Shown piece after piece: positions 574 to 55,952 of a DNA stretch of 64,000 nt (the stretch's first letter is position 1; every line of letters begins with the position of its first letter). Source of the stretch: Hypanus sabinus (taxonomy: Eukaryota); contig NC_082707.1 in the NCBI RefSeq assembly GCF_030144855.1, positions 166,904,001 to 166,968,000 of the forward strand. The letters are read 5' to 3'. The position numbers and the translations under genes were made by a program. Under the pieces are notes generated by a model. The model saw only the letters and a list, made by a program, of their open reading frames with translations. It searched no databases and was not told the origin of the DNA.

Positions 574-1048
574 CTACGTTCAATGCAACAGCATTATTTT
601 TATATTCTTCCATAAAATAAAGCCACAGCTATAATGTAATAATATTATTTTATAGTAATACATTTTAGTCATTTACAATGCATTTTGCATGGATGATATA
701 GAACGTCTTGGTCACTTGTCAGCTTCTCCACTAGCCTATAGTTATACAGGATACAGTATTTGATTAGTTTCTCAACAGCTCCTTATAAGACTGGCTACAT
801 TGAACTTTTATCAGATATTGGCTCCCTTACTGGTTCCAAGTAAGTGAGCGAATGAGAGTCTTTGGGGGAAAGTACTACAGTTTGGTTCCTATGTAACAGC
901 CTCTCAAAACACTAAATGAGTGCACTGTTCGTGGAGAAAACATGAGCTGCATTAATGTATTGTAACTTTATTCTATATATATATTTTTTATATATAAAAG
1001 ACTTCTTCCATTTAGGGAATTTGTAAGTGGGTTTTATGTGCCCACATA

Positions 1049-1668
1049 CTCACAGTGGGCACTTTTTTTTCCAGAAACTCCTGCACACCTGATTGCTAAT
1101 GCAAACACCTACTCAGCTGAGCACCTCATTGCATAGAAGGATGCAAACGTGGTCAAGAAGCTCAGTTGTTGTTTCAACCAAACATCAGAATGGGGAAGAA
1201 ATATGATCCAAATGACTTTGAGCAGGGAATGACTGTTGGCGCCAGAAGGGATAGTTTGAGTATCTCAGAAACTGATCTCTTGGGATTTCCACACACAACA
1301 GTCCCTAAAGCAGGGGTTCCCTACTTGGGGCCCACTGTCCCCTCAGTTAATGGTAGGGGTCCATGGCATTAAAAAGGCTGGGAAATGCTCCTGGAGAATT
1401 TTTAGAGAATGCTGAAAAAACAAGGAACATCCAGTGAGTAGCAGTTCTATGGGCAAAAATGCCTTGTTAATGAGAGAGGTCAGAGGAGAATGGCCAGTCT
1501 GGTTCAGGCTGACAGGAAGGCGGCAGTAACTCGAATGACCATGTGTTACGACAGAGAGCCATTCTGAACGCACAGCATATCAAACCTTGATGTGGATTGC
1601 CTACAAGAGCAGAAGCCCATGAACGTGCATCAGTGGCCACTTTATTAGGCCCAGCAGGTGGCAGAGTG
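1049..1668 (+). mobile_element. Non-autonomous Tc1-like DNA transposon remnant
   Basis: Decayed Tc1 transposase N-terminal HTH (MGKKYDPNDFEQGMTVGARRDSLSISET-DLLGF). Terminal motif CAGTGG(G/C)CACTTT at 1053 and 1631. TA dinucleotides at 1047-1048 and 1669-1670. Confidence 0.8.
1311..1390. mobile_element. Short hAT-like MITE nested in the Tc1 remnant
   Basis: CAGGGGTTCCC...GGCTGGGAAATGCTC imperfect terminal inverted repeats interrupt the transposase frame. Degenerate 8-bp target-like flanks (ccctaaag / tcctggag). Confidence 0.6.
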
Positions 1669-2362
1669 TATTTGCTTGCAACAGTTTGGAATCCAGCTGT
1701 CTTGGATCTTCTTGCCAATAGATGAAGACCTTATCCTGTCAATGTAATGTGCAACCCCCCAATCTCTGAATGCAGAGGCATTCTAATGTTTTTGTCAATG
1801 TAAATAAAGTAAGTGGCCTGGACATTTGTTTCCTTTTCTTTCTCTAGCCTTGCTACACAGAATGGGTGCTGTCCCCAATGTTTCAATGTCAGAAGTACTC
1901 AACTAACTGTGAAGTACTTTGGGACATCTTGTAGTCTTGAATAATACATTTTATTTTGCTTGCTTTGCCATGATCATCATCCATGCTTGATTCATGCATA
2001 ACTCAGGTGTCTAGTGATGAACTTACTAAGTACATGATCAGACATGCACTTCTTTAGGCTAACAAGAGAACATGTTTTAAATATACATGGAAGACAATAA
2101 AACTAGCTATGGTCATCCGCAAGGCAACAAGTCAGACGAGAGAATAGGTTAATTTTAATTTTCCGGTTGGTTGGAGAAGAATCCTTTAATTTCCATTCCT
2201 CCGCAAAACGCTCTTAATCCTTTAAGTTTGACTTGGATTTCTTTTCGTTTTGTTTTTGAGCAGGGAATGACTGTTGGTTCCCCCACCTCCAGACCACTAA
2301 TTCTGGAAGAGTGGCGAATCCACAAGTTGTGATACTCATGCTATCACAAGCGAGAGACAGGA

Positions 2363-2948
2363 GAGCACCTTTTCCCTGTCCGCAGCAAGAAGCAGGAGGT
2401 CCCAGTGACTAACCATTTCAATTCAATTTCTCATTCCCAATCTGACATGCATTTCCATGTCCTCCTCCAGTGCCATGATGAGGCCAAACTCAGATTGGAG
2501 GAGGAACACCTCATATTCCAGCTGGGTAGACTCCAACCTGATGGCATTAATATTAACTTACGTATATAACTTCTGGTAATTCCATAACCCTCCCTGCCTT
2601 TTTCCATTATCATTACTCTCTTACTGATTTGCTTCTCTTCAGCTGCCCTTCATCTTCCTCTGGTGCCCCTTTTCCTTCCCTTTCTTCTGTGGTCCAATGC
2701 CCCCTCCTCTCCTTCTACTTCAGGCCTTTATCTCTTCCACCTATCATGTGCCAGTTGGTACTCCTTCCCCCCTCTACCTCTTGCTCTGGCTTCTTCCCCC
2801 TTCCTTTCCAATCTGATGAAGGGGTTTTCTGCCTAAAATATCAACTGTTTATTCCCATCCATAGATGCTGCCTGATTTGCCGAATTCCTTCAGTATTTTA
2901 TGTGTGTTGCTCAAGGTTTCCAGCATCTACAGAGTTGTCTGAGTTTAT
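2363..2948 (+). mobile_element. Penelope-like element 3' fragment (GIY-YIG C-terminus plus terminal repeat)
   Basis: Encodes EEEHLIFQLGRLQPDGIN-type C-terminus, then a pyrimidine-rich tract and the ctgatgaaggg...gatgctgcctg...tttccagcatct end. Flanked by the 11-bp direct repeat GAGAGACAGGA (2352-2362, 2949-2959). Confidence 0.8.
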
Positions 2949-3351
2949 GAGAGACAGGATCATTGGATAGGCCGTTATCTATTCCTTGTGGTTACCATTA
3001 ATACATAAGCTATACAAATATAATTCATATTTATTTGGGTGTTCCAGGTTATCTTGCTGGAAAGACATATGATAAATATATTTGCACTAAAGTTCTGATC
3101 CAATTAAATCGCTTATTACTTTGTACATTATTCCCAGTTGTGCTCAGACTGATGATCCCTCTCTGCAAAACACTGTATGTAGTCAGAGAGAAGGAGCTTC
3201 ACTCTGCACTGTTACCATTATTCTAATTGAGGAAAACAGGAGACCAGTAATCAAAAGTGTTCCATTTTCATGATATTGATACACTATATAAATAAAATTG
3301 ATTTCTAAAATCTATAAAATGGACGTGGATATAAATTGAACCTAAACTTAC

Positions 3352-3460
3352 CACAAATCTCACAGCAGTGCCCTTGAGGCTTTAAGGGGGTTGTACAATC
3401 AAGTTCTGCACAATAGCGTTTGGAATGTTGTTGCAAATTAGAACAAATCCTCCTGTGGTT
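3352..3460 (-). CDS. AMN: Amnionless exon 7 (109 nt), cysteine-rich VWC-like region
   Basis: tttgcag|AAC...TGT G|gtaagt. NHRRICSNLQQHSKRYCAELDCTTPLKPQGHCCEIC, same Cys spacing as human WIC...CPQAAC...PQGQCCDLC. Confidence 0.95.
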
Positions 3461-3574
3461 CTGCAAATAAAAATATGAATTCCAGAGTCAGCAGTTGGCC
3501 AGATGCCTCGGTATCAGAGGGTTGTGAGATAAGACTGCAGCTGCTGAAATACTGAGGCTAACAGAAGGGGCTAC

Positions 3575-12309: not shown

Positions 12310-12452
12310 GAAAAGCAGCTGATACTTTTAAGAGATGTTTAGATAGGCATGTGAATGTGAGGAAAATTGAAGGATATGGCATTGCTAATTTAATTGGTTC
12401 AGCACAACATTGTGGGCCGAAGGGCCTGTTCCTGTGCTGTAGTGTTCTATGC
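12310..12452 (+). mobile_element. CR1 3' tail
   Basis: gcacaacattgtgggccgaagggcctgttcctgtgctgtagtgttctatg, shared with other CR1 ends in the window. Confidence 0.7.
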
Positions 12453-21257: not shown

Positions 21258-21462
21258 GAGCAAACACGAGGAAATCTGCAGATGCTAGAAATTCAAGCAA
21301 CACACACAAAATGCTGGTGGAACACAACAGGCCGGGCAGCATCTATAGGAGAAGCACTGTCGACGTTTCAGGCCGAAGGGTCTCAGCCCGAAACGTCGAC
21401 AGTGCATCTCCTATAGATGCTGCCTGGCCTGCTGTGTTCCACCAGCATTTTGTGTGTGTTGC
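21258..21462. mobile_element. Fold-back (inverted) Penelope terminal-repeat fragment
   Basis: 80-bp arms 21297-21376 and 21383-21462 with 5 mismatches by eye. Flanking direct repeat TTGCATAAAAT(G/A)TAA at 21243-21257 and 21459-21473. Confidence 0.85.
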
Positions 21463-27287: not shown

Positions 27288-27372
27288 CTACAAAACAAAA
27301 GAGCAGAGCACAAGTTTGTTTGATAATCTCTGAAAATAAAAATAAAGGTAATACAATTATATTCTTACATAC

Positions 27373-27491
27373 CTTATCACTAGGAAATAGGACTCTGTCA
27401 TTTTTACAAGGTATTTTCCCTTTGTCCCAGTTTGAGGCATTGTTGAAATTGGTGTTAGGAATCCATTGTTTGTAGAAGGCACCTGAAACAT
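27373..27491 (-). CDS. AMN: Amnionless exon 2 (119 nt)
   Basis: atgaaag|AT GTT...GAT AAG|gtatgt. VSGAFYKQWIPNTNFNNASNWDKGKIPCKNDRVLFPSDK versus human [22 protein letters not shown]. An alternative acceptor 9 nt downstream is possible. Confidence 0.92.
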
Positions 27492-27564
27492 CTTTCATGG
27501 GAATAATAGGAGATATTTGGAAAAGAAGCCACAGACACCAAGATTTACTAACCCAGTTGAGCAG

Positions 27565-41547: not shown

Positions 41548-42020
41548 ACAGGTCAGGCAGCATCAATGAAAAAGAGTAAACAGTCAACGTTTTGGGCCGA
41601 GACCCTTTATCAGGACTGGAACAAAAGGTGAGAAGTTAGGTCAAGCAGGTGGGGGAGAGGGTGGAAGGGAGGAAGTAGTACAAGGTGATAATGGGTGAAA
41701 CCTCGAGCAGAGGGTGGGGTGAAGTAAAAGAGATTAAGGGCTGGAGAAGGGGAGAGTCTGAAAGGAGAGGCTAGAAGACCATAGAAGAAAGGGAAGTGTT
41801 GGAGCACCAGATGGAGGTGATGGGTAGGTAAGGAGATGAGGTGTGAGAGGGAAATGGGAATGGGAATGGTGAAAGGAGGGGGCAATTACTGGAAGTTCGA
41901 GAAATCGCTGTTCATGCCAGCAGGTTGGAATCTACCCAGATGGAATACGAGGCGTTGTATTCAACCTGAGTGTGACGTCATCACAGCAGTAGGGCAGACC
42001 ATGATGGACAGACATGTCGG
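41548..42020 (-). mobile_element. Penelope-like 3' fragment with decayed hammerhead motif
   Basis: Same family as 2363-2948. Minus strand reads CAGTCCTGATAAAGGGTCTCGGCCCAAAACGTTGACTG (41618-41581). Confidence 0.8.
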
Positions 42021-45000
42021 GAGGATGTTAACAATACTTTGCAAAAATCTTCACAGAAGGGAAAAAAAAAATCCAGGAATTAAAAACAGCTCAGCTAGAA
42101 TGAGGAACAAAAATAGCCTGCATAAGAGCTGGAGATCACGGGGCAGTAGTTGACAAAACGCTGGGGCCTGTACTGTAAGCTTAGAAGAGATGTTGCAGAG
42201 ATAGCAGATCCCTAAGCATTTCCTTGATTTTAACAGCAAGCATAACCATGTGATTTTACAGAAGAAAAATTGGGGGATGTTGTGAAGTGCTTAAAAATTC
42301 ATAATATAACTAGCATAACTGAGGTAGAAAAAAGGGAGGTGTTTCGACCACTCTGTTAGAAGATTAATTAGCATGGTAGATAAGAATAATGCAATTGAGG
42401 TTATGCATTAATATTTTTTAAAACAATTATCTAAGAAGTAATTACAGCAAATGAGAGTTCATGGGATTATGAATGATACAAGCATGAAGAAAAAATAAGA
42501 ATAGTTGAGTTATTTGTAAGGCTGTAACTGATTAAGTGCACCAGTATTCTGTGCTTGGGCCTTAGTTATTTCCAGTCTAATTCAATTTCAATCCAGCTGT
42601 TCAGAATTTCATACTCAAATGTTTATCAAACCGAGCAAAAATTTGTAATTCAGATCCATTAAGGAATTTGCTGATAGAGAAATTGAGGATATCTGAATGA
42701 CTGACTCCTACACTTGTGTCTGATGTTCTTAAATGGCAAACGAAGTCTGACTCCCTATTAGTCTGCAGGCTGATAAAGTTGTCCAGACCATAATTCTCCA
42801 AAGCCTCTTCCGAGCTGGATGGGTCATGCTCCTCTGGTTCTACTCTTATTTATCTGGATGAAGCCAGATGGCCTTGCCACTTGACCACACTCATCTGGCC
42901 CATTGCAAAGGGCTCTCCCCACTGGCCATTCAGCACCTTCAAGTGGTGCGGTCTCAACAGGGAATGGGCTTCTCACAGTATTTCCCTAGCATGGTCTGAT
43001 AAAGAGATGTATCAATGCTGAAAAGGAATTTAACAATTTATAAATGTCAAAAGATATTTAAAAATATATAAAATCATAAACTTAAATAGGAAGTAAAGCA
43101 TTCATAAAACATAAAAATCCTTGGAAAAAAGTTACCTCCTTCCTTGGCATGTTACTACTGGTCTAGAATCACAGCAAACTCAGATTCTCTAACCCTAACC
43201 CACTGGAAAAGAGATTCAACCATGTCAAGACTATCGGATTCCACATGGAACAGAGCAACCCCATCTACTAACAAGTAGGTTCTGGACAGTAGGCTGCACA
43301 TGCAGAAAAGTCCCAAGATTTGGTGACATTTCTGATTTGAAATGCCAGTTTCAGCCCAGAAAGATTGAACTCATTGTCTTGGTTCTCCATAAAATCCATT
43401 CTGTATTTACCTCACTGAGGGAAAGTGTTAGTGTAGTTTTGGTAGGCTCTGGATCAAGGATCCTTTTGGTCTCCTGCTGTTGCTTGCATTGTAGGGGGTG
43501 GCTTGGTGCTTCTGTTGGCAAGATGCTTCTGCTGCTGCTTGCGCGAGGGGAGGGGAGGAAGCTTCAGAGCATTCTACAGGGTTCTTGTTCCGTAGGTGTC
43601 CGTGAAGAGTATGAATTTCAGGTTGTATACGTTGACATTAAATAAACCTTTGAAGCCGCCCCATCCAGTCTCTTAGCATGATATCACAAAATAAGCATTC
43701 AACTACAGTTTTTAAAAATTCATTTTCAGGTAGTGGGCCCACTATTTACACCTTCACCAAGGCCACCCACCACCTTCATTATTTGTGATGTTAGTTATGG
43801 CTCTGCTAGAAGCACTTTAGCCTCTGAATCAAAGGGTTTCAAAACTCCAAGCATTTGAGCATAAAATCCCCTGGCAGAGAACAGGATTGTTAAACTGCCT
43901 GAGGTGATACTTGTCAAATTAGTCAAGTCAAAATCCCTGCATGAGTAAGGAAAACAATGAGTTGTTTTCACTGTTGAGGTAAAATATGATTTGAGTTTAT
44001 GGAAAGGTATCACCCCAAAGTGATTCCAATACAGCTCCCTGATCCTGCTCTGCCATTCGATATCATGGCTGATCTTGCATCTCAAGTCCATTCATCTCTG
44101 ATACCCCATCACGTCCAAAAACCCTTTAGTCTCGGCCTTAAATGGCTGAGATTCTACAGTTCTCTGAGGTGGAGAATTTCAGAGTTACAACCCTCTGCAC
44201 CTTCTTTGGCATTTCATAAGTGTCTAAGACAAGCATACAAATCACCTTGGCATTGGCCAAGTGTCAGAAAACGGGATTAATAGGGAGGGTCCACTGGTCA
44301 GAATGGACATGATGGACAGAATGGCTCGTACCCCCTGCTCTATGACTGTGCAAGAGAATATCAGCTGATCTATTATCCAGAGGTTACATCCCAACTTCTA
44401 AACAGCCTCTTCCCATTAATAGCCTCTTACCTCACAGAACTTGAAAGGAATGAGATCAGCTCTTTCTATATTTCAGTGCATGTAGTTCAGTATTAACCAA
44501 ATCCTCCCTGAAAGTGTGAACACCCTCTTCTCTAGCAATAACTTGGTGACTCCATAGCCAACTGACTCCAAGGATAGTCTCCTCATCTTAAATCATTGAC
44601 AACTAAAAGTGCACACAGTTCTCAAAAAGAATTCAATAAAATTTGCACAGTATCAGCAATATCTTACTTTTGTACTGTAATACCCTCTTAATAGAAGTCA
44701 ACTTTTCACTTGCCTCCATCATTTACTCAGTTTATTTACTGTATATTGTGTGAACCCAACACACCAGCATTCTGATTAATGTTTCACCACCAAGTAAGTG
44801 ATGCATCACTGTTTCACTTACCAAAGCAAATACTCTCGCATTTTCCCAGTCATCTTTCTACTAGCTTTGAATCCAGCTGTAAACCTGCCTACATCGCCTT
44901 GTAGTTTCCAGTTGTTGTCTGCTCAGCTCATTTTTCCTGTCACGTCCGCAAACCTAGATATATTACACTCTCTCCTTTCATCTAAAATTATTAATTTCAA

Positions 45001-55659: not shown

Positions 55660-55952
55660 TACAAACACCAGAGGGCATATGTATGAAATTAAGGGAGGGA
55701 AGTTTAGGGGAGACATCGGGGGTAAGTTTTCTTTACATGGAGGGTTGTGAGTGCCTGGAATGACTTGCCGGGGATGGTGGTGGAGGCTAAAACATTAGGG
55801 GTATTTAAGAGCCTCTTGGACAGGCACATGGATGAAAGAAAAATAGAGGGTTATCGGGTAGTGTGGGTTTAGTACTTTTTTTAAGGATTATTTGGGTCGG
55901 CACAACATGGAGGGCTGAAGGGCCTGTACTGTGCTGTAGTGTTCTATGGTTC
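55660..55952 (+). mobile_element. CR1 3' end
   Basis: TNTRGH..KLRG..FRGD...RVVSAWNDLP and tail gggctgaagggcctgtactgtgctgtagtgttctatggtt. Another tail at 56235-56418. Confidence 0.8.

What the first reader, a model, noticed from the sequence alone, without database searches (positions are those of the whole stretch)
1217..2277. Exact 23-nt copy of a decayed Tc1 transposase sequence placed 1038 bp away in unique DNA
Seen: TTTGAGCAGGGAATGACTGTTGG occurs identically at 1217-1239 (inside the Tc1 coding remnant) and 2255-2277 (non-repeat context), and the flanks are unrelated. The Tc1 copy seems to differ from the family sequence I recall at about four of these positions, so the second copy appears to be templated from this particular decayed copy. 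Inference: either a locally templated repair insertion (polymerase-theta or template switching), or a captured guide-like TE fragment embedded in a structured RNA. An assembly or construction artefact is also possible.
Basis: partly seen in the sequence, partly recalled or inferred. Interest (0 to 1): 0.72.

Follow-up and report, generated by a model that had tools for sequence, protein, structure and literature searches.

The report
Repair scar copied from nearby transposon
A 23-letter piece of a dead Tc1 transposon was copied into unique intron DNA about 1 kb away, most likely when a DNA break was repaired; it is real and old, but an ordinary kind of mutational scar with no sign of function.

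Summary
TTTGAGCAGGGAATGACTGTTGG occurs exactly twice in the window, at 1217-1239 and 2255-2277, both on the + strand. It is the longest isolated exact repeat in the window.

- **Copy 1:** it sits in frame in the N-terminus of a decayed Tc1/Sleeping-Beauty-like transposase.
- **Copy 2:** it sits in single-copy DNA. I first thought it abutted a Penelope-like retroelement. That element in fact spans 2363-2948 and has its own 11-bp target-site duplication, which starts 75 nt from copy 2.
- **Family comparison:** the 23-mer differs from the Tc1 family majority at five positions. The donor is therefore a minor variant, and the copy 1,038 bp away is by far the most probable one.
- **Support in other data:** contigs from three other organisms, in three other studies, span the segment without losing it. 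It is not an assembly artefact, and it predates their split.
- **Function:** there is no Rfam hit and no notable fold. Divergence between organisms is the same as in the flanks.

Best reading: a germline-fixed templated insertion made during break repair, of the polymerase-theta "distant template" type. The enzyme, the microhomologies and the pre-insertion allele are not shown. This is a new example of a known kind and of low interest. The scan holds another, unchecked note of a templated-insertion-like scar elsewhere in this genome.

The parts
1217..1239 (+). Donor copy of the 23-mer, in frame in the Tc1-like transposase N-terminus (codons for FEQGMTVG)
   Evidence: family comparison
2255..2277 (+). 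Recipient copy of the 23-mer: a templated patch in single-copy intron DNA. The patch is the copied tract plus any microhomology at either end, so the letters really inserted may be fewer than 23.
1040..1669 (+). Decayed, internally deleted Tc1/Sleeping-Beauty-like transposon remnant holding the donor. Boundaries are approximate, taken from multi-copy depth and ITR-like ends. A foreign insert of about 118 nt lies at about 1311-1428.
   Evidence: (depth, joints 1310>1429)
1670..2254 (.). Single-copy DNA between donor and recipient
   Evidence: depth 0-13; one search finds no other copy in the window
2278..2362 (.). Single-copy DNA to the right of the patch. It is not retroelement sequence. It ends in the left copy of the Penelope-like element's target-site duplication (2352-2362).

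Best explanation
A DNA break in this AMN intron, in the germ line of an ancestor of organisms A to C (probably also D), was repaired by end joining with a templated insertion. One resected 3' end paired briefly, through a few bases of microhomology, with the decayed Tc1 remnant 1,038 bp upstream on the same chromosome or on the sister chromatid. It was extended by about 17-23 nt and released, then joined to the other end. This left a direct-orientation copy of Tc1 coding sequence in otherwise unique DNA. Polymerase theta (TMEJ) is the most likely enzyme. The patch has no function and has drifted neutrally since. Shown: the exact patch, its sharp borders, the minor-variant donor nearby, the unique recipient context, and its presence in several organisms. 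Inferred: the break, the polymerase, the microhomologies and the direction of synthesis.
For: The pair is exact at 23/23, with no other match at up to 3 mismatches and 0 of 100 shuffles giving any. Flank identity drops to chance at both borders. It is the longest isolated exact repeat in the window, with about 1e-4 expected by extrapolation. Direction of copying: copy 1 keeps the Tc1 reading frame and continues as Tc1 on both sides, whereas copy 2 has unique flanks. The 23-mer differs from the family majority at five positions, and only about 7% of the depth aligned at 1225 carries the window's G. Carriers of the variant are therefore a small minority, and one of them lying 1 kb away by coincidence is very unlikely. 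Contigs of X4 (1865-2525), X5 (2030-2448) and X7 (1895-2551) bridge the site. From record length against the gap count, X5 has 0 deleted letters, X4 has 1 and X7 at most 11. The patch is therefore real and older than the split of at least A, B and C. Size and distance fit known behaviour: POLQ-dependent templated insertions of 2-35 bp are copied from sequence next to the ends or many kb away, are often begun and ended at microhomology, and include a 'distant' (>100 bp) in-trans class (PMC7454005).
Against: No allele without the patch was seen, so the insertion is inferred and not observed. Microhomology cannot be read, because it is hidden inside the identical tract; at most TTT on the left. 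Any accompanying deletion is unknown. The exact 23-mer was not counted across the genome, so a donor elsewhere in the same Tc1 subfamily is not strictly excluded. None of the five sampled 31-mers across 2225-2307 was found in X4, X5 or X7. Their copies therefore differ somewhere in that stretch, and the base-level state of the patch in them is unknown. X1, the only exact holder, may be the sample the assembly was made from.
Confidence: 0.68

Rival explanations
1. The patch was templated or captured in trans: copied from another genomic copy of the same minor Tc1 subfamily, or from a transcript or cDNA of one, and not from the copy 1 kb away.
For: About 7% of the depth aligned at 1225 shares the window's G, so other copies of the variant probably exist. 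One unrelated ORF fragment also reads GMTVG (P0057). Donors many kb away are known for POLQ insertions (PMC7454005).
Against: An exact donor only 1,038 bp away on the same strand would then be a coincidence. With tens of variant copies in a genome of gigabases, the chance of one lying within about 1 kb of a random site is of the order of 1e-5 (inference).
Confidence: 0.1
2. RNA-templated repair: the broken top strand was extended on nascent AMN pre-mRNA. That RNA is antisense to the Tc1 remnant and so carries the complement of the 23-mer. The reverse-transcriptase activity of a repair polymerase would do the copying.
For: AMN is transcribed from the minus strand across both sites, so the local nascent RNA has the right polarity to template a + strand patch. 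It would also explain why the local copy was used.
Against: Nothing in the sequence distinguishes an RNA from a DNA template. AMN would have to be transcribed in the germ line, which was not shown. No RNA run holds the stretch.
Confidence: 0.07
3. Remnant of a second Tc1 insertion at 2255-2277 that lost everything else by deletion.
For: The Tc1 family is very abundant here (depth 10^3-10^5).
Against: Both flanks are single-copy and unrelated to Tc1. Two precise deletions would be needed to leave 23 nt identical to a neighbour that carries minor variants. An old copy would also have diverged from its neighbour.
Confidence: 0.05
4. Chance identity between unrelated sequences.
For: The scan covers very many windows, so events of about 1e-4 per window will occur somewhere.
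Against: 0 of 100 shuffles gave a match even at up to 3 mismatches. Extrapolation from shorter isolated repeats gives about 1e-4 per window, and about 2e-6 for a pair within 1.1 kb (and arithmetic). Real small non-tandem duplications are far commoner than that.
Confidence: 0.03
5. A functional element: a Tc1-derived guide or target embedded in a structured or small RNA.
For: The + strand of 2110-2351 folds slightly better than shuffles (z = -2.15, 5 of 200 shuffles as good).
Against: No Rfam family. The minus strand gives z = -0.99. No RNA run holds it. CpG observed/expected is 0.31, as in the flanks. Divergence between organisms is 2-2.4% with indels, the same as neighbouring intron DNA. Exact words are lost in B-D.
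Confidence: 0.02
6. Assembly or construction artefact.
For: The only run with the exact junction words, X1, may be the source sample.
Against: Contigs of three other organisms, from three other studies, span the left flank, the patch region and the right flank with 2-2.4% mismatches and no loss of the segment.
Confidence: 0.01

Closest known systems
Polymerase-theta-mediated end joining with templated insertion ('distant' in-trans class; Hwang et al., NAR Cancer 2020, PMC7454005)
   Same: A short insert (2-35 bp reported) that is an exact copy of sequence more than 100 bp to many kb from the junction, in direct orientation, with no flanking homology.
   Different: This one is seen as a fixed germline scar in a wild vertebrate genome, millions of years later. 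POLQ dependence, microhomology use and the accompanying deletion cannot be checked.
MMBIR / microhomology-mediated templated insertions (MMB-TI; PMC8421209)
   Same: A templated patch made by template switching at microhomology.
   Different: MMB-TIs as defined there are inverted copies of templates within 100 bp. This patch is direct and 1,038 bp from its template.
Templated sequence insertion polymorphisms, class 2 (Onozawa et al. 2014; from my own knowledge, not checked here)
   Same: An insertion of sequence copied from elsewhere, with no target-site duplication and no poly(A), ascribed to break repair.
   Different: Those inserts are usually longer (tens to hundreds of bp), come from distant transcribed loci, and are thought to be RNA-templated. 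Here the donor is local and the insert is 23 nt.
Filler DNA or the 'tail' at retroelement junctions (Penelope-like element 30-40 bp tail; PMC8557442)
   Same: Extra short sequence close to a 5'-truncated Penelope-like element.
   Different: The patch is 75 nt outside the element's 11-bp target-site duplication and is Tc1-derived, not element-derived.

Membership tests
Templated insertion at a repaired break (TMEJ type) | The inserted tract is an exact copy of a donor elsewhere | tested here: met
   23/23 identity, and the only pair in the window
Templated insertion at a repaired break (TMEJ type) | No homology beyond the tract (sharp borders) | tested here: met
   30-nt flanks match at 12/30 and 9/30; blastn finds only the 23-mer
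Templated insertion at a repaired break (TMEJ type) | Insert size and donor distance within the reported range | tested here: met
   23 nt at 1,038 bp, against 2-35 bp copied from adjacent sequence up to many kb away (PMC7454005)
Templated insertion at a repaired break (TMEJ type) | Microhomology where copying starts and where the ends join | not testable with these tools
   This needs the allele without the patch. At most TTT on the left; the right end is hidden inside the tract.
Templated insertion at a repaired break (TMEJ type) | An ancestral allele without the patch exists | not tested
   All organisms whose contigs could be laid already carry the segment. No outgroup was reachable.
Templated insertion at a repaired break (TMEJ type) | Dependence on polymerase theta | not testable with these tools
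   Experimental only
Second Tc1/mariner insertion | Tc1 similarity beyond the 23 nt, terminal inverted repeats, TA duplication | tested here: not met
   Flanks are single-copy and unrelated to Tc1
Retroelement 5'-junction filler / Penelope-like element tail | The patch lies directly at the element's end, inside its target-site duplication | tested here: not met
   The element is 2363-2948, bracketed by GAGAGACAGGA at 2352-2362 and 2949-2959. 2278-2362 shows no significant similarity to the element.
MMBIR templated insertion (MMB-TI) | Inverted copy of a template within about 100 bp | tested here: not met
   Direct orientation, 1,038 bp away (definition)
Structured non-coding RNA | Match to a known family, or a fold well beyond shuffles with conservation above the flanks | tested here: not met
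   No Rfam hit; z = -2.15 and -0.99; divergence as in the flanks

The most novel reading that the evidence does not exclude
The patch was copied from nascent AMN pre-mRNA, which runs antisense through the Tc1 remnant and carries the complement of the 23-mer. It would then be a natural, germline-fixed example of transcript-templated double-strand-break repair in a vertebrate.
Probability: 0.07. Interest if true: 0.55.

Novelty: new member of a known kind. Interest (0 to 1): 0.2.

Why it matters
It is a clean natural example of a short templated insertion whose donor can be named: a decayed transposon copy 1 kb away. It is old enough to be shared by related species. Scars of this kind show that error-prone end joining with distant templates acts in vertebrate germ lines. 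A genome-wide census of them could measure how often, and from how far, such copying happens. On its own this single case changes nothing about AMN or about transposon biology.

Tried and rejected
1. Filler at a retroelement junction. My first reading was that copy 2 sat at the 5' junction of a 5'-truncated Penelope-like element. I matched the codons after 2278 to 'FTCTS...YIGET' by eye.
   - Frameshift-tolerant protein alignment gave scores of 20 or less.
   - Profile hmmsearch found homology only from 2360.
   - blastn to skate element loci L001 and L002 started at 2366-2367.
   - Shuffle tests gave p of about 0.1.
   - The 11-bp duplication at 2352-2362 and 2949-2959 then settled it: the element starts at 2363.
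2. GTTTTTGAG (2252-2260) and GTTTATGAG (2943-2951) as a target-site duplication. Rejected: the family consensus shows that GTGTTTAT is the element's own 3' end.
3. Further templated patches in 2278-2362 from around the donor. None beyond chance: three 8-mers against 1.9 expected. The 18-nt inverted pair 1250-1267 / 2328-2345 is not significant.
4. Retroelement DNA from the closest protein relatives, P0009 and P0010. No DNA was served because the file was too large. P0004, P0011 and P0044 are not on record.
5. Protein search with the Tc1 N-terminal ORF, to learn the subfamily state. One weak hit only.
6. Pfam on the short Tc1 and retroelement pieces gave nothing. The atlas gave only a lead, HTH_SB at 0.88.
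7. A junction-centred run search, meant to show exact conservation in organisms B-D. It returned only X1.

Full report
**Observation**

TTTGAGCAGGGAATGACTGTTGG occurs at 1217-1239 and 2255-2277, both on the + strand. These are the only two matches in the 64-kb window even when three mismatches are allowed, and none of 100 dinucleotide-preserving shuffles gave a match.

The borders are sharp. The 30 nt on either side agree at 12/30 and 9/30, which is chance level, and blastn finds only the 23-mer.

I also listed every maximal exact repeat of 13 nt or more in the window, on both strands, and kept those with unrelated flanks. Their numbers fall about four-fold per added base: 84, 22, 6 and 3 at 13-16 nt. 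The few at 17-20 nt mostly lie in transposon tails. The 23-mer is the longest, and extrapolation gives about 1e-4 expected. Chance is not a serious explanation.

**Copy 1**

Reading 1190 onwards in frame gives MGKKYDPNDFEQGMTVGARRDSLSISETDLLGF.... This is the helix-turn-helix N-terminus of a Tc1/Sleeping-Beauty-like transposase. The atlas lead is HTH_SB/Tc1-like at 0.88, which is a lead only; Pfam finds nothing on pieces this short.

The element is a decayed, internally deleted remnant of roughly 1040-1669. It carries stops and a foreign insert of about 118 nt at 1311-1428. It belongs to a very abundant family: contig depth is 10^3-10^5, against 3-13 for the neighbouring DNA.

Tc1 sequence continues on both sides of copy 1. 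Copy 1 is therefore the original and copy 2 the derivative.

**Copy 2 and a corrected first reading**

To the right of copy 2 lies the 3' part of a Penelope-like retroelement. Its GIY-YIG endonuclease tail shows in ...EHLFPVRSKKQEVPVTNHFNS...LEEEHLIFQLGRLQPDGINI. phmmer found 56 relatives, the best at E = 5e-14.

I first thought the element reached 2278, which would have made the 23-mer filler at its 5' junction. The tests did not bear this out:
- Frameshift-tolerant alignment to five relatives gave only noise before 2360.
- A profile built from 13 relatives matched from 2360 onwards (E = 1e-29) and nothing upstream.
- blastn to two skate copies (L001, L002) began at 2366-2367.
- Shuffle tests on 2278-2362 gave p of about 0.1.

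An exact 11-mer, GAGAGACAGGA, then turned up at 2352-2362 and again at 2949-2959. Those are the two boundaries that had been set independently. The 5' one comes from the profile match. The 3' one comes from the family consensus, which ends in ...GTGTTTAT at 2948.

So the element is 2363-2948 with an 11-bp target-site duplication, and 2278-2362 is original intron DNA. The depth table agrees: 3-7 over 2286-2362, rising from 2363.

**Is the donor this particular Tc1 copy?**

Laying contigs of four runs at 82% likeness or more piles paralogous Tc1 copies on the remnant. Many stop aligning at 1221. Their continuation, consistent across three organisms, reads CTGTGGAATGATTGTTGGTGCCAGA, where the window has GCAGGGAATGACTGTTGGCGCCAGA. 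That gives five differences inside the 23-mer, at 1222-1225 and 1233.

The window's state (Glu-Gln-Gly...Thr) may partly be a minor-subfamily state (Glu-Arg-Gly) with further decay, so other genomic copies could share it. I could not count the 23-mer genome-wide. Even so, if only a few per cent of copies carry the variant, the chance that one lies within 1 kb of a random site in a genome of gigabases is of the order of 1e-5. The local copy is then overwhelmingly the likeliest template. This step is inference.

**Reality and age**

- **X1 (organism A):** a 316-nt contig lies on 2009-2324 with no difference, and all five sampled 31-mers of 2225-2307 are present. X1 may, however, be the sample the assembly came from.
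- **X4 (organism B):** a contig covers 1865-2525 with 16 mismatches.
- **X5 (organism C):** a contig covers 2030-2448 with 8 mismatches.
- **X7 (organism D):** a contig covers 1895-2551 with 16 mismatches.

Comparing record length with aligned length and gap count, X5 has 7 inserted and 0 deleted letters, X4 has 17 inserted and 1 deleted, and X7 has 19 inserted and 11 deleted. None lacks a 23-nt segment, with the reservation that X7 could lack up to 11 letters.

The patch is therefore not an assembly artefact. It predates the split of at least A, B and C, as does the retroelement insertion that the same contigs span. The right end of the Tc1 remnant is also present in B and C (X4 1503-1814; X5 1553-1703).

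One caveat remains. None of the five sampled words of 2225-2307 is held by X4, X5 or X7. Their sequence differs somewhere in that stretch, and I could not see where.

At 1-1.2% divergence per lineage, about 0.5 differences are expected between the two 23-mers since that split. Perfect identity in A is therefore unremarkable.

**Function**

- There is no Rfam match at E of 1 or less, apart from a spurious bacterial motif elsewhere.
- 2110-2351 folds with z = -2.15 on the + strand and -0.99 on the minus strand.
- No RNA run holds the stretch.
- CpG observed/expected is 0.31, the same as in the flanks.
- Divergence between organisms is 2-2.4% plus indels, the same as in neighbouring intron DNA.

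The 'CpG-retaining structured RNA' idea in a sibling note (s1-210447) finds no support here.

**Context**

Pfam Amnionless matches two minus-strand exons. One, at about 27.4 kb, covers profile positions 1-34. The other, inside the tested ORF 3308-3487, covers positions 204-236. The finding therefore lies in an AMN intron, downstream of the Cys-rich-domain exon, and all three transposon-derived pieces are antisense to the gene. I did not verify the intron number.

**Mechanism**

The anatomy is a short exact direct copy, with a donor 1 kb away in cis and no flanking homology, in unique DNA. This is the anatomy of a templated insertion made during end joining.

In the usual model a resected 3' end pairs at a microhomology, is extended for a few to a few dozen bases, dissociates, and is then joined to the other end. 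Direct orientation with an upstream donor fits the in-trans variant. There, the 3' tail of the right end copies the resected single strand of the left end, which needs about 1 kb of resection, or else copies the sister chromatid.

Published POLQ-dependent insertions are 2-35 bp long. They are copied from sequence adjacent to the ends or many kb away, and often begin and end at microhomology (PMC7454005). MMBIR-type insertions as defined in PMC8421209 are inverted and within 100 bp, which does not fit.

A variant that sequence cannot distinguish is copying from nascent AMN pre-mRNA, which has the right polarity.

The break itself, the polymerase and the microhomologies are inferred, not shown. 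Left microhomology can be at most TTT, and the right is hidden inside the tract.

**Verdict**

Local templating is supported, the guide-RNA idea is unsupported, and an artefact is rejected. This is a new example of a known kind of mutational scar, tidy but ordinary. The scan also holds an unchecked note of a templated-insertion-like scar elsewhere in this genome (s1-213535).

Noticed in passing
window 2363-2948 (+), duplications at 2352-2362 and 2949-2959: 5'-truncated Penelope-like retroelement (GIY-YIG endonuclease tail plus 3' UTR), bracketed by an exact 11-bp target-site duplication, GAGAGACAGGA. Contigs of organisms B-D span its 5' junction, so it is shared with them.
   Followed up: yes
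window 1311-1428: Insert of about 118 nt inside the Tc1 remnant. Many family contigs skip it (joints 1310>1429 and 1274>1426). It has its own multi-copy depth and a loose-end pile at 1384, so it is probably a fragment of another repeat.
   Followed up: partly
window 1628-1650 versus about 1040-1075: The Tc1 remnant seems to carry two ITR-like ends in the same orientation (CAGTGGCCACTTTATTAGG at 1632 resembles the left end near 1045).
   Followed up: no
window 3308-3487 (-) and 27352-27501 (-): Amnionless (PF14828) exons on the minus strand, covering profile positions 204-236 (Cys-rich CC.ICG motif) and 1-34. These fix the gene's orientation and the intronic position of the finding.
   Followed up: yes
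window 41553-42025 (-): A second, more strongly 5'-truncated copy of the same Penelope-like family, about 69-71% identical to 2476-2875.
   Followed up: partly
window 12432-12451 and 55929-55948: An isolated exact 20-mer, CTGTGCTGTAGTGTTCTATG, in direct orientation with unrelated flanks. It is the second-longest isolated repeat in the window. It may be transposon-derived or another templated patch.
   Followed up: no
window 21272-21462: Two short copies of the retroelement or SINE tail in inverted arrangement (21346-21272 on the minus strand, 21413-21462 on the + strand), forming a palindrome-like pair.
   Followed up: no
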